64,000 nucleotides of DNA. Origin: Leucoraja ocellata (taxonomy: Eukaryota). Position 1 is the first letter of the stretch. Every line of letters starts with the position of its first letter. A program made the position numbers and the translations under genes. The stretch covers positions 12,090,001 through 12,154,000 of the forward strand of contig JAWMAR010000026.1 of NCBI GenBank assembly GCA_036785375.1, read 5' to 3'. This document shows positions 26,424 through 63,951 of this stretch, one piece after another. Under the pieces are notes generated by a model. The model did not search any database. It was not told the origin of the DNA and was given only the letters and a program-made list of their open reading frames with translations.

Positions 26424-28102
26424 ATGTTGGCGAAATTTCCTGTACGGTGCATGTCGCTATGTGGTATAATTTGGCATGGTGAGTTTAGATATTTGTGTTG
26501 TTCCTGAATTGCAATTCATATTTTACATCTTTTTTTCCTGTTTACATCCGGCAGATGTAGCAAAAATGCCCCTTCCATTTGGGTGCCCTTCTTCCATGAT
26601 TGTTTTGTATTAATCTGCTATTTTTTTCCTTATCCAGTAAATGCAACTAATGTCTTACTTAATTTCGGCAGTTGTGGAAGTATCTTCGAGCTCAGTGTAT
26701 CAATTTCCTAATGATGCAGATGTCCCCATCGGTGCAAACTTCACCATGTTCTGCAAATTTCCCATATCGCAAGATACTATTTCCGTTTTTTGGTGGAGAG
26801 AAGGCATGAGAACATCATTGGAACCAGATACGAGAAAACAATTTCATGTAGGTAGCGGGAGCGGAACATTTGTTCTCCATAATGTCAATGTTGCAGACTC
26901 GGGAACATATTACTGTCAAGCAAAGCACCAGAATCAACACATTGGGAATGGAAGTGGCTGTCTGCTGACTGTGCTCGGTGAGTGTGCATGTTCGAAAATT
27001 AAGAGATTTTCAGTTCTCTGTCATTTACATATAAATTCGTCGTCTATAAAATGTTCCTTGATAAAATGCCGGTGCTAATAAATCCCAAGAAATATAATGG
27101 AATGGACGACTTGAACTGCGTCTTGAACTGAAATGAATAGCTGTGGTAGAAAGTCAGTTTTCCTTTCACCGAGGAAAGGAATGGCGAACAATTTTAGCAA
27201 CTTTCCCCTAGATTAGGCATTGTACGCAACATTAAAGTTGGGATATTCCATATCAGCAACATCACTGATATTCCACTTCAGCTGCTTCCCGTGTTCATTC
27301 ATTGCCCAGGTATCTTTCTGATGCTTCGATATCCAAATCTTATATTTGACTCGGCGCATGACCGTGTTGAACTCTGTACATTCCCATAGTGAAGTATGCA
27401 CCATTGAAAATCTCCATCCCAAGATCTGAACATCAATTGACCAATCAATTTTGAGCACCGAAATGTAATCAATGAACGTAACTACACCCTAACAATGCAC
27501 GTAACCACCCGACTCGAGAAATCTGTGACATCTCTACTTTAATACCATTATTTTCAATTAAGGAAATACCGATAAAGTCCCAAGCGTTAAAGTTAACATA
27601 GAAAGCCAGTCGTTTCCATTCAGAACATTGGCGCCTTTATCCCATATTACCCAAATATTAACCCTCCTTGTATAATGTCTAAAATCGCTCAGTTTGTATA
27701 TCCAGTGTTCAAAAAAATCCATGGTTAACCAACGTAATATATAATTATAATATAGATCACTGAAGTGTAATGGAAACATGCAATATAACTTTTTTTCTTC
27801 TGCTTAAGATTCCCCAACTCCTTTGAACATTGTTTCACTTGAAGATAGTTTGGCTGCTCCAAAACTCGTGTGTAAAACAGATGCGTTTTATCCAGAGACA
27901 TTAGAAATCTTCTGGAGAAAAAATAATGTGGACATTCTAACTGGCATTGAAACCGTGAAATACAGGAATGCGGAACGATTGTATGAAGCTTCCAGCTTTT
28001 TGGAAATAGCGCAGCCTGCCCGGGGTCAAGATGTGTACACCTGTTTAGTATCGCATATCTCACTTAAGGTACCGGCCAGTTTCACCTACATCGTCGAACC
28101 AG
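26424..28102 (+). CDS. IgSF receptor gene A (leader-VJ-C1; 3' exons not visible)
   Basis: Exons 26424-26478 (MLAKFPVRCMSLCGIIWH), 26672-26977 (V-type), 27809-28102 (C1), all phase 1 with AG/GT; assembly gap follows. Confidence 0.88.
26672..26977 (+). CDS. Gene A VJ-type Ig domain exon
   Basis: TMFC...WWR...DSGTYYC...IGNGSGCLLTVL; CAG acceptor, GTGAG donor. Confidence 0.92.
27809..28102 (+). CDS. Gene A C1-set Ig domain exon
   Basis: LVCKTDAFYPETLEIFW...YEASSFLEI...YTCLVSHISL. Confidence 0.92.
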
Positions 28103-28258
28103 GTAAGACTGGGAATATTTGCAGTTGAGAATGAGTTAGTAGCTGATCAGAATAGCGGATTAAAATTTTAGATCTATAGAAATAATATAGGGAGAAAGAG
28201 TTAAGGTGAATCATTTTTACACCAACGCTTCAATGTACCAGCATTAATCATCCCAATG

Positions 28259-28458
28259 NNNNNNNNNNNNNNNNNNNNNNNNNNNNNNNNNNNNNNNNNN
28301 NNNNNNNNNNNNNNNNNNNNNNNNNNNNNNNNNNNNNNNNNNNNNNNNNNNNNNNNNNNNNNNNNNNNNNNNNNNNNNNNNNNNNNNNNNNNNNNNNNNN
28401 NNNNNNNNNNNNNNNNNNNNNNNNNNNNNNNNNNNNNNNNNNNNNNNNNNNNNNNNNN
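28259..28458. other. Assembly gap (200 N)
   Basis: Run of N. Confidence 1.
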
Positions 28459-29100
28459 TTTTCCGGTTAAGAACCTCCATCTCATTTTATTCGCCATGCA
28501 ATTTCAAAGACTCTCTGGATAAAGGGCAGACGTTTTACACACGAGGTTACGGAGGAGAAATCCTTCAACCGGAACAAATTTTAAGGAAGTTGGTGGAGCT
28601 GAAACCAAATGAAGGCCTTCTCCACATTTGGATGAGCACGTTGTCTCCTTTCTCCCGCCTAATTGTATAAACTACTTATATTAGTTGGTCGAGAAATGTT
28701 TTTTTAACCGTCTGCGTTGACGTTATATTATAAATTCTTGCATGGTGGGTAATAAGATGACGTTAATTTTGTGCAATGCACAAACAGGTTGAATCTAAGA
28801 ACTGATACCATGCTTGTAAATGAAACCAACGTGACGAAGACATTAATTGGCATCCAACTACTGTGCGACACGTAGTAAATATTTGTTAAAAAGAGCCGTT
28901 CAATCACTGTTTATGTGTCCGATGGATAAGAGCTTAGTAGACTGTGGCGTCGTATAATTGTTCGACGTTCATCGCGCTTAACGAGTTTTAAATTGTATAA
29001 CATTGTATAATTGTATTGTATATTAAATGTATTTCACGGTTCGGAAGATATTATCTAATTCAGTGTATTGATATATTTTATATAATAACTACTATATAAT

Positions 29101-32100
29101 ATCTATCTATCTATCTTATATATATAAACCTCAAATCAGTCCGCCTGCCGCCGTACGGCGTCCGCCGCGTTTCTTCCTTTGACGCTCCGCAACTCCGAAA
29201 CCGGACGCGGAATCGTCGACGTCTTTTCCATTTCGGTAGAGATTTTGCTTTTCTTTCTAAGTATCCGCTCCTCGTTACATTTCGTCGTGTTTAAGTACGC
29301 TTTTTTAATCAAATCCTACACCCCCCCCCCCCCCCCACCACCTCGATATTTCAAAAAGAAACTGGATTCTCATCCACACAAGCAGCTCCCTGTGAACGTT
29401 CCATCGTGTGATGTCACAATGCCCGATGCTCACAGATGGCCAATCGGAATGGATTCATTTACATATGCCTTTGCAGGAGCCCAGCCCATGGTGAACATTC
29501 CATCGTGTGATGTCACAATGCCCAATGCTCAAATTACATTGTTGCCATAGACAACGCTCAGCGATTATTCAAATTCTTCATAACTGTCATTTCTGATTTG
29601 CTTGTTGAAGTGAAAAGTCCTGAATTGCATTGTCTGATGCAGGAAGATTGTTCAGATGTTGGGAAGTCCAGGACACGCGGGACACAGTTTAAGGGATAAA
29701 GGTGAAATCCTTTAGTACTGAGATGAGGAAACATTTTTCACACAGATAGTGGTGAGTCTCTGGAACTCTCTGCCACAGAAGGTAGTGGAGGCCAGTTCAT
29801 TGGCATATTTAAGAGGGAGTTAGATGTGGCCCTTGTGGCTAAAGGGATCAGGGGTATGGAGAGGGGGAGCTGTGAGGAGGATGCTAGGAGACTGCAAGGT
29901 GACTTGGATAGGCCTGGGTGAGTGGGCAAATGTTTGGCAGATGCAGTATAATGTGGATAAATGTGATGTTATCCATTTTGGTGACAAAACGGGAAAGCAG
30001 ACTATTATCTAAATGGTGGCCGATTGGGAAAGGGGGAGATGCAGCGAGACCTGGGTGCCATGGTACACCAGTCATTGAAAGTAGGCATGCAGGTGCAGCA
30101 GGCAGTAAAGAAAGCGAATGGTATGTTAGCTTTCATTGCAAAAGGATTTGAGTATAGGAGCAGGGAGTTCTACTGCAGTTGTACAGGGTCTTGGTGAGAC
30201 CACACCTGGAGTATTGCGTACAGTTTTGGTCTCCAAATCTGAGGAAGGACATTATTGCCATAGAGGGAGTGCAGAGACGGTTCACCAGACTGATTCCTGG
30301 ATGTCAGGACTGTCTTATGAAGAAAGACTGGATAGACTTGGTTTATACTCTCTAGAATTTAGGAGACTGAGAGGGGATCTTATAGAAAACTTACAAAATT
30401 CTTAAGGGGTTGGACAGGCTAGATGCAGGAAGATTGTTCCCGATGTTGGGGAGGTCCAGGACAAGGGGTCATAGTTTAAGGATAAGGGGGAAATCTTTTG
30501 TGACGAGATGAGAGAACTTTTTCACACAGAGAATGGTGAATCTCTGGAACTCTCTGCCACAGAGGGTAGTTGAGGCCAGTTCATTGGCTATATTTAAGAG
30601 GGAGTTAGATGTGGCCCTTGTGGCTAAGATCAGGGGGTATGGAGAGAAGGCAGGTACGGGATACTGAGTTGGATGATCAGCCATGATCATATTGAATGGC
30701 AGTGCAGGCTCGAAGGGCCGAATGGCCTACTCCTGCACCTAATTTCTATGTTTCTATCAGCCGTGATCATATTGAATGGAGAATGGTGCAGGCTCGAAGG
30801 GCCGAATGGCCTACTACTGCACTTAATTTCTATGTTTCTATGTGTCCCTCTCCTCACCCCTCTCCCTCTGCCACCCATCTCTCTCCCCCACCCCCCTTCC
30901 CTCTCTACCACCACCCCCACCCTCTCTACCACCACCCCCTTCCCCCTACACCTCTGTCCCTCTTCTACCACTCCCGCTACCCCTCTACCCCTCCCTCCCT
31001 CCCCACTCTTCCACTTCTCTCCCACTCTCTCCTCCCCCACTCCTCACCCCTCTCCCATCCCTCTCTCCCCACCCCTTCCCTCTCTACCCCACCCCCTACC
31101 TTCTCTCCCCCCACACCCTTCCCTATCCCTCTGTCGCTCTTCCATCACTCCCGCTACCCCTCTCCTCCTCCCTCCCCACTCTTTCCCCTCTTTCCCCCTA
31201 CCCCTCTCCCCATCCACCCTCCCCCAAAGCTCTCTCCCCATCCCTCACCCCCTACCCCGCTCTCCTTTCCCTCCCAAATCTATCCCGTTTCCTCCTCCCC
31301 CCTCCCCTCTTCTCACCCCCCCCCCCCCCCCCCGCAAACGCCGTTGGGGAAACAGACCATAGAGGGAGTACAGAGAAGGTTCAACAGACTGATTCCTGGT
31401 ATGTCAGGACTTTCAAATGAACTGGATAGACTTGGCTTGTACTCGCTAGATTTTAGAAGATTGAGGGGGATCTTATAGAAACGTACAAAATTCTTAAGGG
31501 GTTGGACAGGCTAGATGCAGGAAGATTGTTCCAGATGTTGGGAAGTCCAGAACAGGGGTCACAGTTTAAGGATAAGGGGGAAATCCTTTATCATATTGAA
31601 TGGTGGTGCAGGCTCGAAGGGCCGAATGGCCTACTACTGCACTTAATTTCTATGTTTCCCTCTCTTCACCCCTCTCCCTCTCCTCACCCCTCTCCTCACC
31701 CCTCTCCCTCACCCATCTCCCTCTCTCCCTCACCCCCCTTCCCTCTCTACCCCACTCCCTTCCCTCTCTCCACCCGCCCCCTTCCCCCTACCCCTCTCCT
31801 CCTCCCTCTCACTCCCCACTCTTTCCCGTCTCTCCCTCCACCCCTCTCCCCCTCCTCCCCTCCCTCCCCATTCCCCCCTCCCCCACATCTCTCTCCCCAT
31901 CCCCCTCTCTCACCCCCTACCCCGCTCTCCTTTCCCTCCCAAATCTGTCATGTTTCCTCCTCCTCCTCTCCCCTCCCTCCCCTCTTCTCACCAACCCCCC
32001 CCCCCCCTCCCCCCACCTGTGAGTTTGGGGGTGGTTAATTTGAGTGTGATGCCGCAGCCCCTACTCCCCCTCCCCACCCCCCCCCCCCCCCCCGCAAACG

Positions 32101-35559: not shown

Positions 35560-35930
35560 TCGGGGCTGTGGCGGCGGCGGCCCAACTCGCTGATGCGGCA
35601 TTCCAGCTTTCAGCAGCTGGCCGGAGCTGAGGCTGCGGGACTCGGATCCGAGGCAGAGGGACTCGGAGCTGATGGAGCGGTGGCCCGACTCGCTGAGGCA
35701 GCGGGACTCGGAGCGGAGGCAGCGGGACTCGGAGCTGAGGCAGCGGGGCTCGGAGCTGAGGCAGAGGCAGCGGCACTTGGAGCTGAGGCAGAGGCAGCGG
35801 CACTTGGAGCTGAGGCAGCGGTGGCCCGACTCGCTGAGGCGGCGTTCCAGCTTTCTGCAGCGGCCCGACTCGGAGCTGAGGCTGTGGCCGGCCGACTCGG
35901 AGCGGATATGGCGTTCCGGCTTTCGGTAGC
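35560..35930 (+). repeat. GC-rich minisatellite (~21-27 bp unit GACTCGGAGCTGAGGCAGCGG)
   Basis: Direct tandem repeats giving the low-complexity GLGAEAA ORF. Confidence 0.8.
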
Positions 35931-36056
35931 GGCGACATCACCACGGAGGTCCACTGGACTGGAGGGTGGCATCTTCGGCCTGGATCCCCTCAGCACAGAG
36001 GGAGAACAAGGAGGGAAGAGACAGAGACTAAGACTTTTGCTTCCACCACAGTGAGG

Positions 36057-44300: not shown

Positions 44301-44734
44301 CTAGTATTTAAACGATTGCATAACGTGGCATTAACTTTGAGACATCCTTCGCGAAAAAAAAGTTATCACTACAGGACATTGCGATGCTTTGATGATATTT
44401 TGCCATGTGCAAACTTTTTTATTGAATAAAATGACATATATAAGCAAGAGCACGTGTTTATTTAAAAAAAAATCGTTTTTAAATCGCTTGCTTCGCTTTC
44501 CGCATCAAAACACGGACCATTTAGAGGGTCAACAACAATTTCCGACAACTAATCACAATATGCAAAGTGAAAGCGAGGACTGTCTTTGCGCGTGCGTTTT
44601 ATGGTGATCATTGCTCCTTGATGTGCAGACCGTGGGGAAAAAAATCTTAATCCACGGAATAGTCTTTCGCTTCTCAACTTCTCGCTTTCCTTGAAACCTT
44701 TACACCCGCGTACATTGAGTATTTGTCATTGTGC

Positions 44735-44794
44735 TTAGATAGCGATGTTTCCTTGGAGTTGGAAAGTCAGCTTGTCATCTCCGCCTCGTTTGGT
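44735..44794 (-). CDS. Gene B terminal exon (frameshifted)
   Basis: TKRGGDDKLTFQLQGNIAI*; homologous to gene C terminal exon, with a 17-bp deletion. Confidence 0.8.
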   Translation of the reverse strand, partial: TKRGGDDKLTFQLQGNIAI

Positions 44795-47700
44795 CTGTGA
44801 AATAAATTCAATATTACCTGTTAGCGCATCGTACAGTGACTTGGGAAAACAATCGATTTTTCAATACAATTGGAATATAACCAACAATTATCATTTCCAG
44901 ATTGCAGATAACGTATAAGAGTTTATGTTCATATGATTTAGAAGCTCCAGTCTTCTGCGGAGCCTTTCTTGCTCTAGCGAACAGTGTAACACAAAGGTTA
45001 CACAAAAAAGCTGGAGAAACTCAGCGGGTGCAGCAGCATCTATGGAGCAAAGGAAATAGGCAACGTTTCGGGCCGAAACCCTTCTTCAGACTGATCGGGG
45101 GCGGGGGTGGGTGAGGACAAGAAAGGGAAAAGGAGGAGGAGCCCGAAGGCTGGGGGATGGGAGGAGACAGCAGGGGGGCTGAGGAAGGGGAGGAGACAGC
45201 AAAGACTAACAACATTGGGAGAATTCGATGTTCATGCCCCCGGGGTGCAGACTCCCCAAACGGAATATGAGGTGCTGTTCCTCCAATTTCCGGTGCTGCT
45301 CGCTGTGGCCATGGAGGAGACCCAGGACAGAGAGGTCGGAGATGGAGTGGGAGGGGGAGTTGAAGTGCTGAGCCACCGGGAGGTCAGCTTGGTTATTGCG
45401 GACCGAGCGGAGGTGTTCGGCGAAACGATCGCCCAACCTCCGCTTGGTCTCACCGATATAGATCTGCTGACATCTAGAGCAGCGGACGCAATAGATGAGG
45501 TTGGAAGAGATGCAGGTAAACCTCTGTCGCACCTGGAACGATTAAACACAAGTGTAACACAAATATTCATGAAACATTTTCAATTTTATTCTCTCCACAT
45601 TGCCATCAACACTTCGCTCACATAGGTTATACCACTTGCCTAAACACGGGACATTTTAAATGTCTAATTAGCCTATCACCCCTCACGTGATTCGGGATGT
45701 GCGAAGAATTCGGAGCACCTCGGGAAACCCGCGAGGATGTAACAAATAACGTTAAAACATCACACTGACAGCACATACGGCCAGGATGCGTTTTACCTTG
45801 TGGCTGGATATACGAGGACAAGCCATAATATCTCTCTCACTGTGTGATCTTCGTTAGATAATATGGAAATACTGCAAAGAGTGCTTGTCATATGTCCCAG
45901 ATAGAACTCTGAAATTCTTACTTGCAGCAGCACAACAGAATAAAACATAGTACTCTGTAAATAATATAATAAACCTCTCTGAGGTCCAGAGCCATCCTGC
46001 CACCTGCCCCTTATTGTGGATTTCCTGAATTCAGATTTCAATCTGTTCCGAATCATTGTCAGAATTTCTCATATTTCGTGGCGCTGGATATGCCCGCTGG
46101 GTGGAAAAGCATGTTGGCTGTTCCCTATCTTGTCTGTTTCTTAATTTCCCATTAATTATGGACAGCATTCTACATTAAACCCGGGAAAAGAGATACAGGG
46201 ATGGCGTCGTGCAGCGGAATGTGTTGTTCGGCTCTATCTGGTTTCAACGTTGCAATTGGAAATTCGCCATTACGGCTTTTCCACAGTCGGACAAGGTCAA
46301 CATTATGTTCACGTTACTTCATAATCAATAGAAATAATTTCCTTTAAGCTGATATTTCCTTGGAATTATTTTCGTGCAAATACTTTTCCCTTACCTCGGC
46401 ATAGACAACATTCTCTTCCTTTCGTCGATATTTGGTCATTTTTTTGCCCTCACTCAAGTTTAGTGTTGCGTAGGCAGAGGCATCTTCACTTGACGCTTGC
46501 CGAACCTATTAGAAAGTGACATTCAACACAGTTAGCAGAGTGTCTGATGTAGTTCTTTAAAGAGTGAGTCTGAAACATAAACATACAGAATGAATGCAAA
46601 ATCGGGGCACGATACCATTTGAACTGCATTCAATTATATTTCTCAGAATGTCATTCCCGAGAGGATTCAGTGCCAGTGTTTAACTTGTTTATTAATTTTG
46701 TAGCTTGCGATTCGTTTGGAACTATGAGACTGCAGGTTTAGTCGCTGCGCCCCTTCCAATATTAGAGGTGACAGGCAAAATTGTTTCCTTCTGCGCTGCA
46801 ATGTTCTAAAATTATATGGAATGAAACTGATATATTCTCTGCTGATCGTATAATTTCTGTACTGGTCCATCCCTCTTGGAAACACGAAGAATAGCTTCAC
46901 CTACCGGTTCTACGCTACGACTTGCTTCCACGCAGTTTGCATTAATACCTACATGAAAAAAAAGAAATCTCGAATAACATTTTAATGTCAGGAAAATGTA
47001 AATTACGCATTAGATTATAATCACATCTACTGCCCTTGAAGGCAGCGACAATCCCGTATACGTATCGCAGTATCACCGCCACAGTGTAGTGTGTTGTGCA
47101 TTTCCTTCATATACACCATCCGCGTTAGATCAGCACAACCGGCGGAAGCGAAGGTCTAGGCCAAATAACTCATCCTTCACATTTTGACGTTAAAGCAAGT
47201 CAACAATGCGAAAGGGCAGGGGAAATAATTGTATTTTAACTTACAACTAATAACTGGTATTGCTTTGGATTCTTGTTTCAATACTGCTCAGAATGCACCA
47301 ACCGCTTTTCTATCAACGGGTGTGTGAAATGGAAAATTATGCAAGGTTCTTACCTCGTTGTGCCTTTAATACGAATCTTGTCAAAATTATAAGCAGAACT
47401 ACAAATGACAGTCCGCCCACGACACATCCGAGAATTAGAGTTTTGTCCGTGGTTTCTGGGGTCTCTGGATATGGCGAAAAATGAGAACAGTGAAGCATAA
47501 ATACATACACAGGGACCGGTAGACAAGAAGGCAGAGCAATCGTTCAATATTTTCGGCACAAATATGTTATGACTGCCACATGGCACGCATTGTAAGGTAA
47601 TGACGAATTTATAGAACTGATCGCATTATACGGCGGCTCTTTGCTGAGGTTTGGTTAGTAAGTTAAGATGAGTATTAATTTTCATTTTACAAAACTACGC

Positions 47701-50060
47701 CCGGTAGTTTGACAACGGTTTAAAAAGTCAGAATGCTATATTCTATATTCTGGATCTGACACCCTGGACCCGCCGCCACAGGTTCCAGTAAATATGAAAA
47801 GGAACTGGATTTTTGTGTTTGCACAACTATCTAATTGTATTTGTAAATAGACACAAAAGAGCTGGAGTAACTCAGCGCGACAGGCAACATCTCTGGAGAG
47901 AAGGAATGGGAGACGATTTGGATCGAGACCCTTGTTCAGATTGTATTTCTCGGCAGGCTGAAGTCTACGTTAAATGCCTCCCGGCTTACCTTGCTCGACA
48001 ATGTAGCTGAAACTGGCAGGGGCTGTAAGAGATACGTGTGATACCAGGCAGGTGTAAACAGTTTTGCCTGGAGCAGGCTGCGTATCGTGCAAAAAACTGG
48101 AAGCCTCATAAAGTCCATCCGCTGTTCTGTTTCTCACGGTTTCTATGCCGGTCAAAATCTCCACGTTGTTTCTTTGCCAGATTACGTCTAATTCCATTGG
48201 ATAAAACGCAGCCGTTTTACACACGAGTTGCGGCAAATGCGGTGCACTTCCTTCAATAGCAACAATTTTCAATGGAGTTGGGGGAGCTGGAACAATTAAA
48301 AAAAAAGCGTGAAGCTGCAAAATATATTTTATTTCAATGAACATAATTGTCGCTGAACCGTTGCTGCTGCCTCCTGTTATCCGTGTGGTTGTTTGTTGAG
48401 TTTATAATTTTGTTATACATTATTTTACGGAGGATATCAAGGTAAGTAGTGTAATTGAAACAAAGCATGAATGGAGTGCTGCCTAGCGCGATTATTATGA
48501 AGGAATGTGACACAGGTAGGTATTGCTTGGTAAGATTCCGTGACAGTGCTTTATGTTGAATTCAAAATCACGCTTTTCTTCTGAACATTTGCTCTTTCTT
48601 ATGTGCATGTGGTAGTTACAGAAAATGGACTGCACTGAATGGCAGAAGTACATCGGCGACAACAACTGCTTTTCTCGAAAAGCACGCAAGGATGAACGGA
48701 GCAAACTCTGTTTCTCATTTCATATATTTTATTAACAAGACATTAACGACCATGGTTCCATTTGTGCTGGAGCCACTGTTAGTAATATTTAGCGAGCGGG
48801 AGAGTTAATTGTACCTTTTTTTGTCAATTCATTGCGTAATCACCTCGTTTCTGTTTAAGCATATTTATTTTCCTTCATTTGTGTAATAACATCTCATTGT
48901 ACTATAATTATTAATTAATAAAGATATATTACATTTTACTCCCTGTGCCATATAAATGATTACCAAGCAAAGAAATAATATCGGAGAATTTCAGTTGTAG
49001 TTCTTTTTTTTTCTTTTTTCATTCCATGAACTTTCCTGGAGACAGTGAATGTGAAAACCAAATTATCCACCTCAAAACTGTGAGATCAATTTCTCCTCCG
49101 TTTTTAGTTGATGTGAAAGTTTGTCGGCGTGGGAAATTTGCAACTTTCTGGAAATTCGGAGTAACGTGAATTTGGTTGGGTATTTGAAAAGCTGGAGGTC
49201 AAAATATAAAGTGACCTGCCAATTTACAAGAGCCATAACCAGGGTAACGTCACTATGACTTTTTTAACATAACCCGGAGTAAATAAAACAAAACTATAAC
49301 AGAACTCTCGCTGAACGTATATTGACCGACGGATGGAATATTTTTCAGTATTTTCCCTTTATTTCAGATTTCCATCTCGGAAGTAACTATTAAAATTATA
49401 GAGCTAGATAAGATTAATATTTCCTCCACCAGCAAGCTTTTGTAACATTGCAACAGAAGAACATACCCCACTACTCGTAACAAAGACACTTACTTAACAC
49501 AATTAGCTGGGAGCCAGTTCCATTGCCGATAAGTTGCAGTTGATATTTCACTCGACAGTAATACATCCCGAAGTCATCGACACTCACATTCAGCAAAGTA
49601 AATGTACTGCTTCCCTTGTCTACTTTGAATTGTTTTCTGCTGTCCGCTTCCATAAATGTCTTCTCGTCCCCTCTCCACCAAGAAACGTCAGCGGTTTCTT
49701 TTAATATCGGAAATTTGCAGAACATGGAATCACTTCTGCCCCTGGAGACACTCAGGATTGCGGGGAATTGTTCCACTTTGCTCGAAGTTGCTTTTGTCAG
49801 TGGCAGAAATAAGTAAATATGATGAAAACATTTGTACATACAGCACCAAGAAAAAGAGCCAATGGATACACAAATACAAAACAATTAGGAAATAATGGTT
49901 AGCCAATTGTAGAAACGTTGTAAATTTAATTTACTGTGGCATACTAGTGTAAAATATTGTCAAATATGATTTGCTTAGCGAAATCGGTACAGAAACTAAG
50001 CATACCTTGACAAAGCAAAGCAAGAAGACCCATGTACCGAACCATTGCTTTCACCGGCAT
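44735..50060 (-). CDS. IgSF receptor gene B (leader-VJ-C1-TM-ITIM tail, truncated C-terminus), ~321 aa
   Basis: Exons 50060-50006, 49790-49494, 48286-47990, 47455-47354 (TM), 46948-46905, 46505-46395, 44794-44735; phases consistent and exon sizes parallel gene C. Confidence 0.88.
44996..45550 (-). mobile_element. Penelope-like 3' terminal fragment in gene B last intron
   Basis: Near-identical to 5215-5762; GIY-YIG ORF 45206-45532; 13-bp TSD AGTGTAACACAAA at 44983-44995 and 45551-45563. Confidence 0.92.
46395..46505 (-). CDS. Gene B cytoplasmic exon 2 (ITIM SAYATL)
   Basis: VRQASSEDASAYATLNLSEGKKMTKYRRKEENVVYAE; 111 bp. Confidence 0.88.
46905..46948 (-). CDS. Gene B cytoplasmic exon 1 (44 bp)
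   Basis: GINANCVEASRSVEP; same size and donor (CCG|GTAGGTGAA) as gene C exon 59155-59112. Confidence 0.8.
47354..47455 (-). CDS. Gene B transmembrane exon
   Basis: ETTDKTLILGCVVGGLSFVVLLIILTRFVLKAQR; CAG/GTAAG. Confidence 0.85.
47990..48286 (-). CDS. Gene B C1-set exon
   Basis: LVCKTAAFYPMELDVIW...YTCLVSHVSL. Confidence 0.92.
49494..49790 (-). CDS. Gene B VJ-type Ig domain exon
   Basis: SMFC...WWR...DFGMYYC...IGNGTGSQLIVL; GTAAG donor; AAG acceptor inferred. Confidence 0.88.
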
Positions 50061-56515: not shown

Positions 56516-56653
56516 TCAGTTACACGTCTTTTTAGAAGTATTCACATCAGCGTACACCGTGTATTTGTTGTTCTGTTTGGATGCTGATGTTTTCTTGGGG
56601 TTGTGATGTTGCACAGTTGCGTAGGTCAGCTTGTCATGTCCACCTCTTTTAGT
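56516..56653 (-). CDS. Gene C terminal exon (ITIM LTYATV, ITSM TVYADV)
   Basis: TKRGGHDKLTYATVQHHNPKKTSASKQNNKYTVYADVNTSKKTCN*. Confidence 0.87.
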   Translation of the reverse strand, partial: TKRGGHDKLTYATVQHHNPKKTSASKQNNKYTVYADVNTSKKTCN

Positions 56654-59600
56654 CTGCGAAAGTAATTAATGATCGGTGATTAGGCAATCATTCAGTGACG
56701 AATTTGAGCATACTGCTTTAAAATAATATTTTATGCAACCCATCAGTTGTTATTTTTACAATGGTATTGATTTGCAGATTTATTTTTGGCTATACCTTTC
56801 TGCTTGATATTGAGTTTAAACGCGAGGAGCTGTTCTTGTCCCACAAAATAATTATTTTCTTTTTCTTTTATGTCAACTTCGACGTAATTACGAAAGTTAG
56901 GAGAATTGGTGAATGCTCAAAATTGTATCCGCAGTATTAAATATTTGGCATAATACGAAGCCCCTTTTAAAGTGTATTTGTGGGATTGGCGGGAATCCAT
57001 TTTGCCTGTCGCGCCCAAGAGGTGGTTCGCAGACTGAAGCTACCGGTACCTCTCCAATAGACACCGCGGCTCGCGGCTTCATCAGCGGCACCGAAATGCA
57101 ATAGAATATAAGTTGGTACTACTTCCTATGGCTCTGCGTCCCCAGCTTTTGATACGAGTCCCCTATTCGGTGGATAATTTGAACGGCTTGTTTACTCTCT
57201 TTTCCCAGGCCATTGTCTTGCATTTGTATTTAGTTTCGCCCTGATTATGAGAACTGGATAGGTTTGTGTGTTCCTAGCTTCCCACCCTTTATTTCTTCAC
57301 ATACAATTTACATTTGAATTTAAACCCGAATAAGGAAAGGAAAATTATATTTATGCTCTGATGAGCAGCGGGCGATAGGCTTTACTTAAATGAAGATTTG
57401 CCATTGTGCACTTATATTTTCCCTGCAGTTTGGGAAAAGCAACTACATTTGGAACAATGCTCATTCCATAACTTAATTACGCTGTCCAAGAGCATTACCT
57501 GTGAATAGGCGACATGTTGTTCTTCTTGTAGACCATTTGAAAATCCTTTGCTCTCGCTTAAATTCAGTGTAGCATAGGCAGCGGTATGTTCAATTGGTGC
57601 TTGTCTCACCTATTGGAAAAGTACATTTAATACTGCGGGTGACCAGGCTTATATAGCTGATAGGACACTAGAACTGTATCTGGGGCTGAAAATCGATGCA
57701 CGCGGGATATAGAGGAATAGATTAACATTTCACTTGCTTTCAATGATATTACCAACGATGTCATTTCAAGGAAGGGGGTGGACAATGGTGTTGGTCGAGT
57801 TTCCTGGCGATAAACATCACCAATAATTTGCACTGGGCCAACCACATTAATGCTAACGCCATGAAAGCACACCATTGCCTCGACTTTCCCAGAGGACCAA
57901 GGAAAGTTGGACGGTCTCCAAAGTCTCTTCCCAAATTCCACAGCTGCACTGTCGAAATAATTATATGGGGATGAATCCCAAATTGGTTTAGCGACAGCTT
58001 TGCCCAGGACCTTAAGAAACGCAGGAACCTGTGATTGCAACCCAGCCAACGACGTAAACAAGCTTCCGTCATTCTCTCCTCTTCCCTCGGCGGACAGAAT
58101 ACACAATAGCTTGAAATCGCCTCGTGTAAGATTTAAAAACGGCTTTATACTCGATGTTATCAAGTTACTAAACAGGCGTCGCGCAAGCTAATTGTGCAAT
58201 CCTGATCTGCGATTTACCTCGTTCTGGTCCTTGAGTTTTTAAAATGTGCACTTTCTCTTTAGCTCTAACACAATATTTTGCATCCTGTGTCATTTCCCTT
58301 TTTGCACTTGGGTATGGTATGATTGTACCCATATATGGTATACAGTTTCCGGATTGCACGCAAAATAAAGTTTATAATTTAATCTCGGTGTACATGACAA
58401 TAATTAACCAGTGCCAATACGAATATCAGTCTTTTGCAGATTTTGGAGATTTCTTCTTCTAAGCATTGCAGAGTGGAAGATGCATTTGTGGGATTCCATT
58501 TAGCAGCCAGCAGCTGCTAAGCAGCTGGGAAGCAGTTCCGATGCCATGTAGGCCATATCCGGTTAAATTGCCTTTCGTTAAGGATCGAAGCCAAAACTGC
58601 AATTAACACGTTAAAGAACGGCACAAGAAAGCAAATTAAATTCTCGACAAAGGTTCTTTTCATTTTTATTTTAATTACCGTGCTTTGAAATTCAATATAA
58701 TTTTTGCCTTAAAATTGCCTTGGGTTGATTGTTGCACTTACTCTCCCATTGGTCAGCAACCCACAATCTCTTCGTAGTCTGATATTTGATACGTTCTCAC
58801 TATCTAAAATTATATTTTTAAGTGTTCCTGCCACCCGAACTAATAAAAGCTCATATTTTCATCCTAAACATCACCTTTCACTTTAGAATAAATTAGGATA
58901 TGATCTGGCATGGAATTGTCAAAAGATGTTGAAGCAGATACAACAGGAATGTTCAAATTATTAGTGGATGTATACTTGACGTAACCTGAAAAATAAATAA
59001 TGGGTTCATCCTGCCCTAGAGTATTCCACGATACTATAGAATAAAACTGATTTATAATATTTCTGCTACGAATAATCCCTATTTTGAAACAAGAGGAGAC
59101 ATTTCACCTACCGGCTCCCCGTTCGGACGTATTCCTACAGAGGTTACGTTATGGCCTAGAGGAATGAAACATGAGTTACATAAAAACAACTTGAATTGTA
59201 AAGATTGATCTGTAGATTTTGACATTAATCTTCTCATTTTAATCAAATTTGCTGCAGAAAATAAGAACGATTGCATTTTTAAATATCAGATGGTGCTCAG
59301 CAGCACCAATTGTCACAATTATAACAATACAACGCATCTTGTACTCTTTCGCGATGTTGCGCCCACTGGACCTAAATTTTAACTGAAACTTTAAAATTGA
59401 AATGGTTTATGAGGAACCGTGTCCATGTCGAAACAGCAATGTAATGTAAACATATGGAGATGTTTGGTTTTGCTCATTGCCACAGAAAACCACAGTTGTT
59501 TTTTCCTCAAAATTGTAATCTTCCATTGCATTAATTATCAATCACACTGGATTTGAAGAATTCCTTATATTTGAAAATATATGCATAGGTGATAATTGAA

Positions 59601-62600
59601 TACATCCAATTCCAAGCTGAAATAATTGAATTTGAAGATCCATCATATTATCACACACATATATCAAAGCCGGCTTCAGAACTCTCTTTACATGTCCATC
59701 TACGTTTCCTTTTCTCCTCTGTGAGCAAACACCATTGACATATCCATTCTCGTTTTAACCATAGAAATGATTATTGTATGATTATTATCAAGATTCTTAC
59801 CGTGCCATATCTTTAAACTGAGTCTCATCACGATTATAATCAGAACTAAAATTACTGATCCACCTACTGCATATACGATAATCTGTTTGCGACCAATTCC
59901 TGGTGGATTAACAGAAAATTTAGAAACTGTAAAGAATTTATACATTTCAGAACAATTATACAAACGGCAGTCAACAAAGTAAATCATTTCGTAGGTGCAT
60001 TTTAATACCCACATCGGAAAGTTTGGAAGGTATATCATGAGGCACCAGATGGAAGTTAGTAATGGAATCCACAGGACAAGCAATTGCCGTTGTATTGTGC
60101 CCACGCGCGGAGAGCTGCTTACTGACGTTAAACGGAATTTAGGCTTTATCTTCATATATTTCACCAGACAGTAGATATATACATATAACCATATAACAAT
60201 TACAGCACGGAAACAGGCCATCTCGGCCCTACAAGTCCGTGCCGAACAACTTTTCTTCCCCTTAGTCCCACCTGCCTGCACTCACACCATAACCCTCCAT
60301 TCCCTTCTCATCCATATGCCTATCCAATTTATTTTTAAATGATGCCAATGAACCTACCTCCACCACTTCCACTGGAAGCTCATTCCACACCGCTACCACT
60401 CTCTGAGTAAAGAAGTTCCCCCTCATATTACCCCTAAACTTCTGTCCCTTAATTCTGAAGTCATGTCCCCTTGTTTGAATCTTCCCTATTCTCAAAGGGA
60501 AAAGCTTGTCCACATCAACTCTGTCTATCCCTCTCATCATTTTAAAGACCTCTATCAAGTTCCCCCTTAACCTTCTGCGCTCCAGAGAATAAAGACCTAA
60601 CTTATTTAACCTATCTCTGTAACTTAGTTGTTGAAACCCAGGCAACATTCTAGTAAATCTCCTCTGCACTCTCTCTATTTTGTTGACATCCTTCCTATAA
60701 TTGGGCGACCAAAATTGTACACCATACTCCAGATTTGGTCTCACCAATGCCTTGTACAATTTTAACATTACACCCCAGCTTCTATACTCATTGCTCTGAT
60801 TTATAAACGCTAGCATCCCAGGACGTTTTTGCTCATTACAATCATTATATCAATTCAGTTTGTCAATTGATCTCACACGGATCTCCTTACAAGAACTGAT
60901 GAAGTACAATTCATTTTAAACAGCATGCAAGTGTTGCTTTCATGCGAATAAATGCGAGCCACATTTAACCTTGTACGGAAAGCTGTCCAGTTATTAATCT
61001 GATCGAATTTGATCTACCGCCCCAATATCATGTGTAACTGGCTCCAGTCTTACCTTGGCCCAGGGTATAACTGAAACTGGCCGCCACCTTCAGGGAGACA
61101 TGTGATACCAGACAGGTGTAAATATCTTTGTCCTCCCCAGGCTGCGTTATTTCCAAAGAACTAGTAGCCACAAACAATCCTTCTTCGCTCGGTTTTTTCA
61201 CAGTTTCGATTCCAGTGCGAATTTCCTCGTTATTTCTTAGCCAGAATATTTCTAATTTCTCCGGATAAAAGGCGCCAGTTTTGCACACAAGTTTCCGTGG
61301 AGATCCAAGTCCTTCAGCAGGAACAATTGTCAAGGGAGTTGGGGGATCTTAAGCAAAGAAAAAAAAATATCGGGTGTTCGCTTTCCATTTCATTGTAAAT
61401 ATTTACATTTTATCTCGCCACCGAGTCGTATTTGTCAAGACCAAATTATTTAATATTTAAACTTCCCAGTTTGTCGTTCATTTATACTCCCTTTCCTAGC
61501 GGACAACCGGACGAACTCCGCCAAGATACAAAGAGGGTGAATTTAAGGAGTGCCAACAGAATTTAAGGAGTTCCAAAATAAACTCTGCTCTGAATGGACG
61601 TTCCCCGGTATCGCGCGAAAGTTTTTGCCAGAAGCCTGCCGTGATTATTTAAAAGTGGCCATGTTCGGATCATTCATATGTTGCAAAAGAAATGGAGCCA
61701 TCATAATCGAAATATAACAGATTCGTATAGTGTGGTGACAGGAAGCGGTTATACATGAAGATTAATGATTAATCCCGTTAGCACTTTAAGTAGTATATGG
61801 ATTAAATCTTCTCACCCTGGTCAAAAAGACCCACTTCAACATTTAATCACTACTCTACTCTACTCAACTCACTCCGACATGCGGGAGATAACCACTTATC
61901 ACGTGTTTGCGCAGTAATCAACCAGAACCAGAACCAGATATGGGTTTGAAATGCCGATCACAACCATTTACCTGCATGTGAACCAAGTGCTGGAACACCT
62001 ACCTTTCTCGCGCATTGAATGCTTTTATTAAAACACCGTGGTTTCAATTACAAGCAATTTACGAGCGCACTTATTCAATATCAGTATGTAGGAAAGAACT
62101 GCAGATGCTGGTTTAAACCGAATATATGTTGGAGTAACTCAGCGGGACAGGCAACATCTCTTCGGAGAACGAATGGGTGACGTTTCGGATCGAGGTTTGA
62201 AGAAGGGTATCGACCCCAAACGTCACTCATTCCTTCTACCCAGAGATGCTGCCTGCCCCGCTGAGTTACTCCAGCATTTTGTGTCTCTATACAAATCAGT
62301 TCCATCTGTTGTGCCAACTTGGCGACAGTGAATCGACAACGTTAGATCGGCGTTAATGATGGTAGCTTGCAGAAGCCAAACGATGGAAAATAACAAGCTC
62401 TGTTTCTCGCTGTGCTGATTCTACTCATTTACGTCTGCACGTAAAAGGTCCTATATTTGGCATTTATTAACGCGAACTCCTTCCGTACGAGCTGCAGCCG
62501 GTGTCTAACTGGACGGGGAGTTAATTGTTGGGTTGCTTTGTCGGTTTATTACAAATCTTTAGAAAGCTTGACTTAATTCACTTAATCATGATAATCTTTA

Positions 62601-63951
62601 ATGATGAAATAAATGTTACTGATTATTCCCGGACTTTAAATAATTTCATTTGAGATGTTGTTTACTTCTTTTTTCCCCCGTACGGTGCCACATTGGTTGA
62701 ATAGACTGACGTTATGCCTGACAAAATTAGTATCAAGCGATTTCAAAAAAAAGAAAAAAGATTTCATTGAAGTCAGCTTGGAATCAGCAGCGATGAGTCC
62801 CACATGTTGGAAGACCAAGGTCCTTGGGTTGCAGCAGCACATTGGTCTTATGAGGTTCCAAAGCTGTCGATGTAGAATAGAGGCATGACAGACTCTACCA
62901 TCGACGTATTAAAATTGCTCCTACTCTATTTTCTTAGTGATGAGAAACCTGGACATCACACTCCAGCCACTCAAACTAACAGGAATATCATTTAAATATC
63001 TCATCGCAAAACATTTCTAACCACACCTCAGAATGAATTCCTTCCATCTCAGCATTTACCCGTTCTTAGCGATAAATCCATCTGGGAGATTGGCTTAAAA
63101 TTCGGGACCGCTAAATGAATGGGCTGCGCCAATTCATAGCGGCAATGAAAAGGAGTCTCGCAAAGTATCGTACAATGAACAAAATAACCCTCAATACCCA
63201 CGCGTCCCACAAGTGCTACTCGACCTGCTGGTTATGTCCATTGTGCTTTGTTTTATTTTGAATTACTGGTCCCTGTAATTTAAAATTGTTATTACTGGAT
63301 ATTTATCAACAGGCGATTTTTCATATTATCCTCGCGACTAGACTTTACAAATGACATAGAACTGAAAATTGTTTATTTCCCTAACACACACACTCACCAA
63401 ATACGGTGATTCGGCTGCCACTTCCATTTCTGATAACCTGCTGCTGGAACTTTACTTGACAGTAATACAGGCCGGAGTCAGCTACACGCACATGTTGGAG
63501 AGTAAATGTTCCGCTTCCAGAATCTATGGTAAATTGTTTTCTATTGTCCGGTTCAAGGAAAGTCTTCATGCCGCCCCTCCACCAATTAACGCTAATATTG
63601 CCTTTCGATATTGGAAATGTGCAATACATGGTAGCATGTTCACCGCCGCCAACGTCCAAGTTGACAGGGAATTGGGACACTCGGGTCGGATAGACTTCGG
63701 TAGCTGTCGGGACACAAGCAAGAACAATTGAAACAGTTGTAAACACTGGACAGAGAAAACAGGAACCAACTGTCGAAAAGCACGAAACAACTATAAACCC
63801 GCGAGGGCCTAATAGATGAACCTAATAGCTCGAAACCAGGTCCGAATTTTCGTAAAATAATACTTAGACCAGAAATGGCACACATTTTAACTATACCCTG
63901 CGTTAGTATGACCAGAAGAGCCATGGACCAAACTCTAACTTTCACCGACAT
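56516..63951 (-). CDS. IgSF receptor gene C (leader-VJ-C1-TM-tail with 4 motif tyrosines), ~348 aa, apparently intact
   Basis: Exons 63951-63897, 63703-63398, 61347-61054, 59899-59801 (TM), 59155-59112, 57609-57499, 56653-56516; total 1047 nt, all AG/GT, in frame to TGA. Confidence 0.92.
57499..57609 (-). CDS. Gene C cytoplasmic exon 2
   Basis: VRQAPIEHTAAYATLNLSESKGFSNGLQEEQHVAYSQ; 111 bp. Confidence 0.88.
59112..59155 (-). CDS. Gene C cytoplasmic exon 1 (44 bp)
   Basis: GHNVTSVGIRPNGEP. Confidence 0.8.
59801..59899 (-). CDS. Gene C transmembrane exon
   Basis: GIGRKQIIVYAVGGSVILVLIIIVMRLSLKIWH. Confidence 0.87.
60184..60817 (-). mobile_element. CR1/HER1-type LINE 3' fragment in gene C intron 3
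   Basis: LYKALVRPNLEYGVQFWSP...FFTQRVVAVWNELP. Confidence 0.92.
61054..61347 (-). CDS. Gene C C1-set exon
   Basis: LVCKTGAFYPEKLEIFW...YTCLVSHVSL. Confidence 0.92.
62080..62290. mobile_element. Palindromic Penelope-derived short element
   Basis: GGAGTAACTCAGCGG...CCGCTGAGTTACTCC inverted arms; related copies at ~16520-16925, ~20410-20585, ~47850-47942. Confidence 0.7.
63398..63703 (-). CDS. Gene C VJ-type Ig domain exon
   Basis: ATMYC...WWR...DSGLYYC...IRNGSGSRITVF. Confidence 0.92.

What the first reader, a model, noticed from the sequence alone, without database searches (positions are those of the whole stretch)
26424..63951. Cluster of three non-rearranging, antigen-receptor-like VJ-C1 receptor genes with inhibitory tails
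Seen: three paralogues share the same leader-V-C1 exon plan (55-bp leader, ~300-bp V, ~295-bp C1). B and C continue with a ~100-bp TM exon and 44-bp, 111-bp and terminal cytoplasmic exons. The V exon ends in a J-like G strand (GNGSGCLLTV, GNGTGSQLIV, RNGSGSRITV) with no intervening RSS or separate J segment. The second domain has C1-set signatures (CxxxxFYPxxLxxxW, YTCLVSHxSL). Known: C1-set domains are largely confined to Ig/TCR, MHC/B2M, tapasin, SIRPs and some B7 members; germline-joined VJ domains occur in NKp30, the CD28 family and SIRPs. Inference: an elasmobranch family shaped like a single TCR/light chain outside the cell but wired to SHP-recruiting motifs inside, i.e. a SIRP-like or NK-type inhibitory receptor family resembling the proposed pre-RAG antigen-receptor ancestor. 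It matches no named gene I recognise and may only be auto-annotated.
Basis: partly seen in the sequence, partly recalled or inferred. Interest (0 to 1): 0.9.

Follow-up and report, generated by a model that had tools for sequence, protein, structure and literature searches.

The report
Ray SIRP-like V-C1 inhibitory receptor genes
This stretch of a ray-like cartilaginous fish genome holds three related, non-rearranging immune-receptor genes that look outside the cell like one antibody or T-cell-receptor chain and carry inhibitory signalling motifs inside, members of a family found across sharks, rays and chimaeras that has been named only by automatic annotation.

Summary
Three paralogues share a 55-bp leader, a 297-306-bp V exon that runs unbroken into a J-like G strand, and a 294-297-bp C1-set exon. 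All internal splice sites are AG/GT and there is no RSS.

- Genes B and C continue into TM, 44-bp, 111-bp and terminal exons.
- Gene C ends in a canonical ITIM and ITSM 23 residues apart.
- Gene B lost that pair through a 17-bp gap.
- Gene A has no detectable TM or tail exon. It stops 156 bp before the assembly gap, and an inverted, broken fourth C1 exon abuts the gap's other side.

The genes belong to a multigene family. Every named member I looked up came from cartilaginous fishes. Automatic names disagree: SIRP-alpha-like, NCR3LG1-like, tapasin-related-like, Ig-lambda-like.

The V domain is compact and I-set-like, not a typical antigen-receptor V. Neither domain is specifically SIRP-like by sequence. 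I found no paper on the family.

RNA reads from a differently labelled organism gave no coverage of the exons, so expression is untested. First readers of this scan noted similar genes on other pieces of this genome.

The parts
26424..26478 (+). Gene A leader exon (55 bp, ATG at 26424, GT donor)
26672..26977 (+). Gene A V exon with in-exon J-like strand (GNGSGCLLTV), phase 1-1
27809..28102 (+). Gene A C1-set exon; no TM or cytoplasmic exon found downstream on this strand
28259..28458 (.). Assembly gap (200 N), 156 bp after gene A's C1 donor; not filled and not looked up
28462..28635 (-). Diverged pseudo-C1 fragment (stop and frameshift), cut off by the gap; remnant of a fourth family member pointing towards gene A
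50006..50060 (-). Gene B leader exon (55 bp)
49494..49790 (-). Gene B V exon with J-like strand (GNGTGSQLIV)
47990..48286 (-). Gene B C1-set exon
47354..47464 (-). Gene B stalk/TM exon (111 bp), no charged residue within the hydrophobic run
46905..46948 (-). Gene B 44-bp cytoplasmic exon
46395..46505 (-). Gene B 111-bp cytoplasmic exon (SAYATL ITIM; VVYAE-)
44680..44794 (-). Gene B last exon: stop at 44735-44737 after a 17-bp gap relative to gene C. The homologous remainder, with the former distal tyrosine motif, continues out of frame to about 44680
63897..63951 (-). Gene C leader exon (55 bp)
63398..63703 (-). Gene C V exon with J-like strand (RNGSGSRITV)
61054..61347 (-). Gene C C1-set exon (47.1 bits to Pfam C1-set)
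59801..59899 (-). Gene C stalk/TM exon (99 bp). An in-frame alternative acceptor lies 27 nt upstream at 59926
59112..59155 (-). Gene C 44-bp cytoplasmic exon
57499..57609 (-). Gene C 111-bp cytoplasmic exon (AAYATL; VAYSQ-)
56516..56653 (-). Gene C last exon: ITIM LTYATV and ITSM TVYADV, tyrosines 23 residues apart, then stop

Best explanation
The window holds part of a tandem cluster of a multigene family that, as far as I could see, is specific to cartilaginous fishes. The family encodes germline-encoded, non-rearranging type I membrane receptors. Each has a signal peptide, one compact V-type domain whose exon already contains a J-like G strand (GxG bulge), one genuine C1-set domain, a short stalk, an uncharged transmembrane helix and a tyrosine-rich tail.

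Gene C is the intact example. Its V domain would bind an unknown ligand. Src-family kinases would then phosphorylate the tail. The C-terminal ITIM (LTYATV) plus ITSM (TVYADV) pair would recruit tandem-SH2 phosphatases (SHP-1/SHP-2) to damp activation. That is how SIRP-alpha or PD-1 work.

Gene B is a paralogue of an older lineage that has lost the distal motif pair, so it is weakened or decaying. Gene A is a V-C1 paralogue whose 3' end is missing from the assembly or from the genome.

Shown: gene structure, domain types, absence of RSS, family membership, purifying selection and tail motifs. Inferred: membrane topology, phosphorylation, SHP recruitment, inhibitory function and immune-cell expression.
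For: - Exon structure with AG/GT at all internal boundaries and the phase pattern 1-1-1-1-0-0.
- Pfam C1-set in 3 of 3 second-domain exons and I-set/V-set in the V exons.
- Gene C exons are collinear with Mobula XP_062923465.1: V 21-120, C1 122-214, TM 220-251, 111-bp exon 269-303, last exon 304-345.
- No RSS in the window, and 0 of its 12 heptamers lie within 300 bp of a V exon.
- Family-wide searches: 33 of 34 hits and 48 of 49 hits carry names, all from cartilaginous fishes. All 22 named family proteins looked up are chondrichthyan.
- The V and C1 trees put A, B and C inside a batoid clade of one subfamily (SH-aLRT 97-99).
- dN/dS is 0.25-0.36 in 6 of 6 pairwise comparisons.
- Gene C's last exon reads as an ITIM and an ITSM with tyrosines 23 residues apart.
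- The hydrophobic transmembrane runs hold no charged residue.
Against: - No transcript evidence. Four RNA runs gave depth of about 0 on every gene B exon. The runs carry a different organism label from the best DNA holders.
- Two of gene C's four tyrosine motifs are not canonical ITIM/ITSM (AAYATL, and VAYSQ followed by T).
- Gene B's tail is truncated and gene A has none.
- The ligand, the expressing cell type and SHP binding are all unknown.
- A conserved N-glycosylation sequon sits on the J-like motif (45 of 67 family proteins by a loose pattern). The V domain may therefore not pair as Ig/TCR V domains do, so the antigen-receptor analogy may be superficial.
Confidence: 0.75

Rival explanations
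1. These are the true (co-)orthologues of tetrapod SIRP genes. The ancestral SIRP would have been V-C1, or one C1 was lost in this lineage. The family would then be SIRP under another guise and would probably bind a CD47-like ligand.
For: - NCBI's pipeline names many members 'tyrosine-protein phosphatase non-receptor type substrate 1-like'.
- The family profile aligns collinearly over V plus C1 with SIRP-alpha d1-d2 (2wng_A, 103 bits, profile 24-215 to chain 3-205) and with SIRP-gamma (91.5 bits).
- The plan is shared: a J-like V, C1-set, and a tail with four tyrosines in two pairs. The SIRP-alpha tail layout is recalled, not tested.
Against: - There is one C1 exon, not two distinct ones. The two family proteins with two C1 domains (P0181, P0099) carry near-identical recent duplicates.
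- SIRP is not among the 60 best solved-structure matches of either the V-only or the C1-only profile.
- UrIg2 scores higher than SIRP-alpha with the whole profile (123 against 103 bits). Both totals include extra domains.
- Other members are auto-named after B7-H6, tapasin, Ig lambda, TCR beta, MHC II and PD-L1, so no mammalian protein is a clear best match.
- A tail-only search found only Heterodontus family members (5 of 5). That search cannot see distant relatives.
Confidence: 0.15
2. They derive from germline-joined immunoglobulin light-chain or TCR clusters, which cartilaginous fishes are known to have. The clusters would later have acquired a transmembrane exon and an inhibitory tail. 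They would then be secondary offshoots of rearranging antigen receptors, not independent non-rearranging genes.
For: - Some members are auto-named Ig lambda-1 light chain-like or TCR beta chain-like.
- Light chains and TCR V domains appear among the solved-structure matches of the V exon at E of about 1e-6 to 1e-12. The C1 exon matches CL and CH domains.
- That germline-joined Ig genes exist in sharks is recalled knowledge.
Against: - The V domain has only 54 residues from Cys to Cys and scores best against I-set domains.
- The position of the canonical F/W of the J motif is N, R or another residue, and often carries a glycosylation sequon.
- There is no RSS remnant.
- The nearest non-family V domains found are tandem compact-V ITIM receptors of turtles, a gecko and a frog, not Ig or TCR.
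- The family is deep and diverse, reaching into chimaeras.
Confidence: 0.04
3. The copies in this window are non-functional relics (pseudogenes) of a family that functions elsewhere in the genome.
For: - Gene A lacks TM and tail exons.
- Gene B has a frameshifting 17-bp gap in its last exon.
- A broken C1 fragment lies at 28462-28635.
- The cluster is riddled with retroelement fragments.
- No RNA coverage was obtained.
Against: - Gene C has seven open exons with canonical splice sites and an intact tail.
- dN/dS is 0.25-0.36 for the V and C1 exons of all three genes.
- Gene A's missing part may lie in the unread gap.
- The RNA runs were probably from another species.
Confidence: 0.06

Closest known systems
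SIRP-alpha / SIRP family (tyrosine-protein phosphatase non-receptor type substrate 1)
   Same: - Germline V domain with a J-like G strand, followed by a C1-set domain.
- Type I membrane protein with a multi-tyrosine ITIM-type tail, read here as SHP-recruiting.
- The family profile aligns collinearly with SIRP-alpha d1-d2.
- SIRP is the commonest automatic name for the homologues.
- Hatherley et al. 2009 (PMC2785349; abstract and passages read) argue that V plus C1 SIRPs are related to antigen-receptor precursors.
   Different: - One C1 domain instead of two distinct ones.
- Compact, I-set-like V domain.
- SIRP is not among the best 60 structure-database matches of either exon profile.
- Orthology and synteny are untested, and CD47 binding is unknown.
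UrIg / UrIg2 (non-rearranging elasmobranch VJ-C1 genes; Flajnik et al. 2025, PMC12227049; outline, introduction and passages read)
   Same: - Non-rearranging single-exon VJ followed by C1-type domains in cartilaginous fishes.
- UrIg2 (9dmx_A) is among the top solved-structure matches of the family profile (123 bits) and of the window's C1 exons (56 bits, to its third C domain).
   Different: - According to that paper, UrIg has three C1-type domains and is secreted, and UrIg2 has nine C domains. Both are described there as evolving conservatively.
- Here there is one C1, a transmembrane helix, an ITIM/ITSM tail and a large multigene family.
- ITIM and SIRP occur nowhere in that paper.
Ig light chains and TCR chains (V-J-C1)
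   Same: The same V(J)-C1 two-domain ectodomain, phase-1 exon plan, GxG bulge and C1-set signature.
   Different: - No RSS and no separate J segment.
- V domain without the length expected for C'/C'' strands.
- No membrane-proximal cysteine in genes B or C for an interchain disulfide.
- An inhibitory tail instead of a charged TM coupled to CD3 or CD79.
Tandem compact-V ITIM receptors of reptiles and amphibians (auto-named pIgR-like, titin-like, obscurin-like, CD22-like, SIRP-alpha-like; P0045, P0074, P0115, P0094)
   Same: They have the same kind of compact V domain ending in an N-G-x-G-type J-like motif. Two that I read (P0074, P0115) also have a transmembrane helix and ITIM-type tails.
   Different: They have two to five V domains in tandem and no C1-set domain. 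The local family profile scores them far lower (about 100-205 bits against 210 or more for family members).
Lamprey TCR-like, hagfish APAR and chicken PRARP genes (recalled; the PRARP paper, PubMed 30770416, is not held)
   Same: As I recall them, these are non-rearranging VJ-type receptors discussed as relics of an antigen-receptor precursor, some with ITIM tails.
   Different: PRARP is only mentioned in PMC10751288.

Membership tests
Unnamed chondrichthyan V(J)-C1 receptor family (auto-annotated SIRP-alpha-like, NCR3LG1-like and others) | V and C1 exons score as family members and sit inside the family tree | tested here: met
   - A profile of 20 family proteins hits the V exons (130-138 bits) and C1 exons (141-155 bits) of A, B and C.
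- The trees place them in a batoid clade (SH-aLRT 97-99).
Unnamed chondrichthyan V(J)-C1 receptor family (auto-annotated SIRP-alpha-like, NCR3LG1-like and others) | Collinear leader-V-C1-TM-tail plan with the same exon breaks | tested here: met
   Six of 7 gene C exons align contiguously to P0036. Genes B and C share all seven exons. Gene A shows only the first three.
SIRP family | Ectodomain of V plus two distinct C1-set domains | tested here: not met
   There is one C1 exon per gene. Family proteins with two C1 domains carry near-identical recent duplicates.
SIRP family | SIRP domains are the nearest known relatives by sequence | tested here: not met
   - SIRP is absent from the best 60 of 1790 V-profile matches and the best 60 of 1102 C1-profile matches.
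- The whole-family profile gives SIRP-alpha 103 bits, below UrIg2 at 123 bits.
SIRP family | Conserved synteny with the tetrapod SIRP locus | not testable with these tools
The window holds no non-family marker gene.
SIRP family | Cytoplasmic tail with ITIM-type tyrosines that recruit SHP-1/2 | tested here: inconclusive
   Gene C has four tyrosine motifs, two of them canonical. A tail-only database search found only close family members. Binding cannot be tested here.
Rearranging antigen receptors (Ig/TCR) | V and J as separate segments flanked by RSS | tested here: not met
   The V exon is continuous through the J-like strand to a GT donor. There are 0 heptamer-spacer-nonamer sites in the window.
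Rearranging antigen receptors (Ig/TCR) | C1-set constant domain after the V domain | tested here: met
   Pfam C1-set at 35.8-47.1 bits against a cut-off of 21. C2-set models fall below their cut-offs.
UrIg / UrIg2 | VJ domain followed by three or more C1-type domains | tested here: not met
   There is a single C1 exon, followed by a TM exon. The UrIg architecture is taken from PMC12227049.
B7 family / B7-H6 (NCR3LG1), tapasin-related | Second domain of the B7-type C2-set or butyrophilin type, or a tapasin N-terminal domain | tested here: not met
   C2-set_2 (17.2 bits against 21) and C2-set_3 (16.5-17.4 bits against 27) fall below their cut-offs. No tapasin-specific domain was hit. These names come only from automatic annotation.
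ITIM-bearing inhibitory receptors (functional class) | At least one (S/I/V/L)xYxx(I/V/L) motif in the cytoplasmic tail and no charged TM residue | tested here: met
   Gene C has LTYATV plus the ITSM TVYADV. Gene B has SAYATL. The TM runs are uncharged. Gene A has no tail to test.

The most novel reading that the evidence does not exclude
The family is a surviving representative of the ancestral membrane-bound V(J)-C1 receptor type. That type would have existed in the first jawed vertebrates, before or alongside the RAG invasion. SIRPs in bony vertebrates, and possibly the rearranging antigen receptors themselves, would descend from it. On this reading the primordial 'antigen-receptor chain' was an inhibitory, SHP-coupled innate receptor. 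Cartilaginous fishes would have kept and expanded it into paired inhibitory and other-tailed forms.
Probability: 0.1. Interest if true: 0.85.

Novelty: new variant of a known kind. Interest (0 to 1): 0.58.

Why it matters
Single-exon VJ genes joined to C1 domains are actively sought as clues to how antibodies and T-cell receptors arose. The 2025 UrIg2 paper says so in its introduction (PMC12227049). SIRP-alpha has been proposed as a relative of the antigen-receptor precursor. [quoted passage not shown]

This family is large, under selection and found across cartilaginous fishes. It is membrane-bound, has a V(J)-C1 plan and carries ITIM/ITSM tails. It sits in the oldest living jawed vertebrates and appears to be undescribed. 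That gives a concrete set of genes on which three questions can be tested:
- whether the V-C1 plan with inhibitory signalling is ancestral;
- how SIRPs relate to Ig/TCR and UrIg;
- whether sharks and rays run paired-receptor checkpoints of their own.

If it turns out to be plain SIRP orthology, the value is smaller but still real. It would push SIRP back to the base of the jawed vertebrates.

Tried and rejected
- RNA evidence. One run search offered RNA raw-read runs only for 'organism A'. The best DNA holders were 'organism B' (0.72 and 0.67 of the words). I laid four RNA runs on all of gene B (44500-50499) at 90% likeness. Depth was 0 to 0.22 in every bin not overlapping a repeat, so no exon was covered. 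The only deep coverage was on repeats at about 44900-46100 and 47850-47950, and most laid reads were only 90-95% alike. This shows neither expression nor silence.
The window's first 26 kb holds only retroelement fragments. Scan notes on MHC genes are all on other pieces.
The claim that the V domain lacks C'/C'' strands rests on length and sequence matches only.
- SIRP tail homology. A tail-only search with a Heterodontus homologue found 5 of 5 hits in Heterodontus. The method needs shared 5-residue words, so a blank says little.
- Search for gene A's missing exons. tblastn with 14 family proteins and a six-frame profile scan found none.
- Rfam scan of the window: 0 matches.
- Literature. Searches found no description of this family. 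One search (PRARP) returned only unrelated acronyms, and one search was too loose to be informative. The PRARP paper and the 2023 UrIg paper are not held.
- Rejected: that the post-gap C1 fragment is an assembly mirror of gene A's C1. It is only about 70-74% identical to the C1 exons of A and B.
- Rejected: that family proteins with V-C1-C1 show a SIRP-type plan. Their two C1 domains are near-identical recent copies.


Full report
Scope and method. I checked the finding exon by exon. The joined step is left out. Whole-protein searches used unchanged database homologues instead.

The genes are real. All six hit immunoglobulin-superfamily Pfam models.
- The three second-domain ORFs pass the C1-set cut-off (39.9, 35.8 and 47.1 bits against 21). 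The C2-set models stay below theirs.
- The three first-domain ORFs pass I-set (31.4, 29.3 and 32.0 bits against 23.7). Two of the three pass V-set (A 31.9 and C 38.0 against 26; B 22.6).

I read the DNA and then checked the borders by coordinate.
- Gene A (+): 26424-26478, 26672-26977, 27809-28102.
- Gene B (-): 50060-50006, 49790-49494, 48286-47990, 47464-47354, 46948-46905, 46505-46395, 44794-44735.
- Gene C (-): 63951-63897, 63703-63398, 61347-61054, 59899-59801, 59155-59112, 57609-57499, 56653-56516.

Every internal border is AG/GT. The intron phases are 1-1-1-1-0-0. The leader is 55 bp in all three genes.

The gap. The N run at 28259-28458 begins 156 bp after the donor of gene A's C1 exon, so it does not interrupt any exon that can be read. 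Immediately to its right, on the opposite strand, lies the 5' part of another C1 exon (28462-28635; profile positions 123-160). This fragment has a stop and a frameshift. It is only about 70-74% identical in DNA to the C1 exons of A and B. It is therefore a diverged fourth family remnant, not a mirror-image assembly artefact of gene A.

Gene A and this fragment both point into the gap, so the flanks share no frame and continuity cannot be judged. Neither tblastn with 14 family proteins nor a six-frame scan with a family profile found a TM or tail exon for gene A. That scan gave 13 hits, all inside A, B, C or the fragment. Gene A is incomplete as assembled.

Non-rearranging. In all three genes the V exon runs unbroken from the acceptor through YYC and the J-like strand (NGSGCLLTV, NGTGSQLIV, NGSGSRITV; compare the J motif FGxGTxLxV) to a GT donor. 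A scan for a heptamer, a 12 or 23 (plus or minus 1) spacer and a nonamer with up to two mismatches found 0 sites in the window. None of the window's 12 CACAGTG heptamers lies within 300 bp of a V exon.

What the domains resemble. The V domain is short, with 54 residues from Cys to Cys in gene C (peptide).
- V exon. Its best solved-structure matches are I-set domains of titin, Robo, contactin and NCAM. Next come full-length matches to shark VNAR (32.8 bits, 6-100 to 2-103), light-chain V and TCR V domains.
- C1 exon. It matches Ig heavy-chain constant domains, a light-chain constant domain, the third C domain of UrIg2 (56.0 bits), and MHC class II beta-2 and MR1 alpha-3 domains.
- SIRP. It is not among the 60 best matches listed for either exon profile (of 1790 and 1102 matches). 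A profile of 20 full-length family proteins does align collinearly with SIRP-alpha d1-d2 (2wng_A, 103 bits) and SIRP-gamma (91.5 bits). It scores UrIg2 at 123 bits. These totals are inflated by extra domains.

The J-like motif has N, R or another residue where Ig/TCR have F or W. It often forms an N-glycosylation sequon (45 of 67 family proteins by a loose pattern; alignment).

Tails. Gene C's tail has four tyrosine motifs:
- AAYATL and VAYSQ(T), both in the 111-bp exon and both non-canonical;
- LTYATV (canonical ITIM) and TVYADV (canonical ITSM), both in the last exon, with tyrosines 23 residues apart.

Gene B has SAYATL (canonical ITIM) and VVYAE(T). A 17-bp gap relative to gene C then shifts the last exon to an early stop. 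The homologue of the distal motif remains out of frame. The hydrophobic runs of the TM exons hold no charged residue. The window therefore contains inhibitory-type members only.

The family.
- An exhaustive HMMER search with gene C's V exon gave 600 hits at E up to 1e-3. The top of the list is taken by giant multi-Ig proteins through summed scores. The single-domain hits of 40-60% identity are proteins of 250-410 aa with the same V-C1-TM-tail plan.
- Of 30 proteins looked up by name, the 22 named family members are all from cartilaginous fishes. Three have no name. Five are non-family: one turtle NCAM2, and four tandem-V proteins of a turtle, a Mobula ray, a gecko and a frog.
- Word-indexed searches gave 34 hits with one homologue and 49 hits with a 20-protein profile. 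All named hits (33 and 48) come from rays, sharks or Callorhinchus. The score drops sharply after the family. These searches cannot see very distant relatives.
- Automatic names disagree widely: SIRP-alpha-like, NCR3LG1-like, tapasin(-related)-like, Ig lambda-1-like, TCR beta-like, class II DP-alpha- or DO-beta-like, PD-L1-like, CD276 homologue, uncharacterised.
- Gene C's exons align contiguously to Mobula XP_062923465.1: leader 1-13, V 21-120, C1 122-214, TM 220-251, 111-bp exon 269-303, last exon 304-345. The 44-bp exon gave no hit. The exon joins therefore match an independent gene model.
- In the V tree (60 rows) the window genes fall in a 28-row subfamily (SH-aLRT 98) and its 24-row batoid clade (97). 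Gene B groups with Narcine, Hypanus and Mobula genes (96). Genes A and C pair (81) beside a myliobatiform expansion. The C1 tree agrees at the clade level (99). These are quick trees on about 100 columns, rooted at the midpoint only.
- dN/dS between A, B and C is 0.25-0.36 in both exons, with dS near 1. The paralogues are old and have been constrained.
- Other tail classes in the family are short tails with an acidic residue at the end of the TM helix, and a basic tail with a CxRC motif. Neither occurs in this window.

Literature. Searches of the held library found no description of a chondrichthyan V-C1-ITIM or SIRP-like family. The relevant papers are these:
- UrIg2 (PMC12227049; outline, introduction and passages read). 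It describes UrIg and UrIg2 as the non-rearranging antigen-receptor genes retained in sharks, and it contains neither 'ITIM' nor 'SIRP'.
- The cartilaginous-fish MHC paper (PMC10751288; passages read). It mentions VJ-C1 genes in tetrapods, and PRARP.
- The SIRP-alpha structure paper (PMC2785349; abstract and passages read).
- The CD28-family survey (PMC11599192; passages read). It covers single-V receptors only.

The PRARP paper and the 2023 UrIg paper are not held.

Expression. The single run search returned RNA raw-read runs only for a species label (organism A) that holds about 6% of the stretch's words. The best DNA holders were organism B. Four RNA runs laid on gene B's whole span gave essentially zero depth on all seven exons. 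Heavy coverage fell only on two repeat families, and most laid reads were 90-95% alike. This neither supports nor refutes transcription.

Mechanism.
- Shown: structure, domains, motifs, family membership and selection.
- Inferred from established knowledge of ITIM/ITSM receptors: ligand binding by the V domain, tyrosine phosphorylation, and docking of the tandem SH2 domains of SHP-1/SHP-2 on the ITIM-ITSM pair, giving inhibition.

I put 0.75 on 'member of an undescribed chondrichthyan V(J)-C1 inhibitory-receptor family that works like SIRP-alpha or PD-1'. I put 0.15 on true SIRP orthology, and the rest on the minor rivals.

Earlier notes of this scan. First readers noted similar VJ-C1 receptors on other pieces of this genome and 3.6 Mb upstream on this piece. 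I treated these as leads only.

Limits. No outgroup sequences were available for a rooted phylogeny, there is no RNA from the right species, and the organism names were coded.

Noticed in passing
window 28462-28635 (-): A broken C1 exon fragment (stop and frameshift, about 70-74% DNA identity to the C1 exons of genes A and B) abuts the right edge of the assembly gap. It points towards gene A. It is a fourth family remnant, and no V exon was found for it.
   Followed up: yes
window 59055-59155 (-) and 46870-46948 (-): If the donor of the 44-bp exon is not used, genes B and C both read on in frame as ...PVGE... to a nearby stop. A Mobula protein (P0026) ends with the same ...PVGE...LVSE... read-through. 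This may be a conserved short-tail isoform without ITIMs.
   Followed up: partly
window 59900-59926 (-): An in-frame alternative acceptor lies 27 nt upstream of gene C's TM exon and would add nine stalk residues. Comparison with homologues favours the shorter form.
   Followed up: partly
window 60258-60882 (-), also 21688-22298 (-): A reverse-transcriptase (LINE-type) fragment sits in gene C's C1-TM intron. A copy about 80% identical at the protein level lies at 21.7-22.3 kb. Many further retroelement pieces fill 1-26 kb and 29-46 kb.
   Followed up: partly
window 44900-46100 and 47850-47950; related copies at 62112-62290, 16787-16926, 5171-6912: Two repeat families are very heavily represented in the RNA runs of organism A (bin depth up to about 2600). 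Many reads there join opposite strands. The copy at 62112-62290 matches itself in reverse. No Rfam family reached threshold.
   Followed up: partly
window 30673-32040 and 35470-36050: Long proline/serine-rich and alanine/glutamate-rich low-complexity ORF arrays, on both strands, lie between gene A and gene B. They look like simple-repeat DNA rather than genes.
   Followed up: no
related proteins P0041, P0153, P0185, P0091, P0086, P0095: These family members have a short tail and an acidic residue at the end of the transmembrane helix (...IIVDH... type). They may be adaptor-coupled counterparts of the ITIM forms. None lies in this window.
   Followed up: no
related proteins P0104, P0158, P0119, P0162, P0193, P0196, P0197: A subfamily has a basic tail carrying a conserved C-x-R-C motif instead of tyrosines.
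   Followed up: no
related proteins P0181 (Chiloscyllium) and P0099 (Amblyraja): In each model the two tandem C1 domains are almost identical to each other. This is either a recent exon duplication or an assembly or model artefact.
   Followed up: partly
related proteins P0045, P0074, P0115, P0094, P0090, P0137: These proteins carry two to five tandem compact V domains, each ending in an N-G-x-G J-like motif; the four I looked up are from turtle, gecko and frog. Two of them (P0074, P0115) show ITIM tails, and none shows a C1 signature. Their automatic names are inconsistent.
   Followed up: partly
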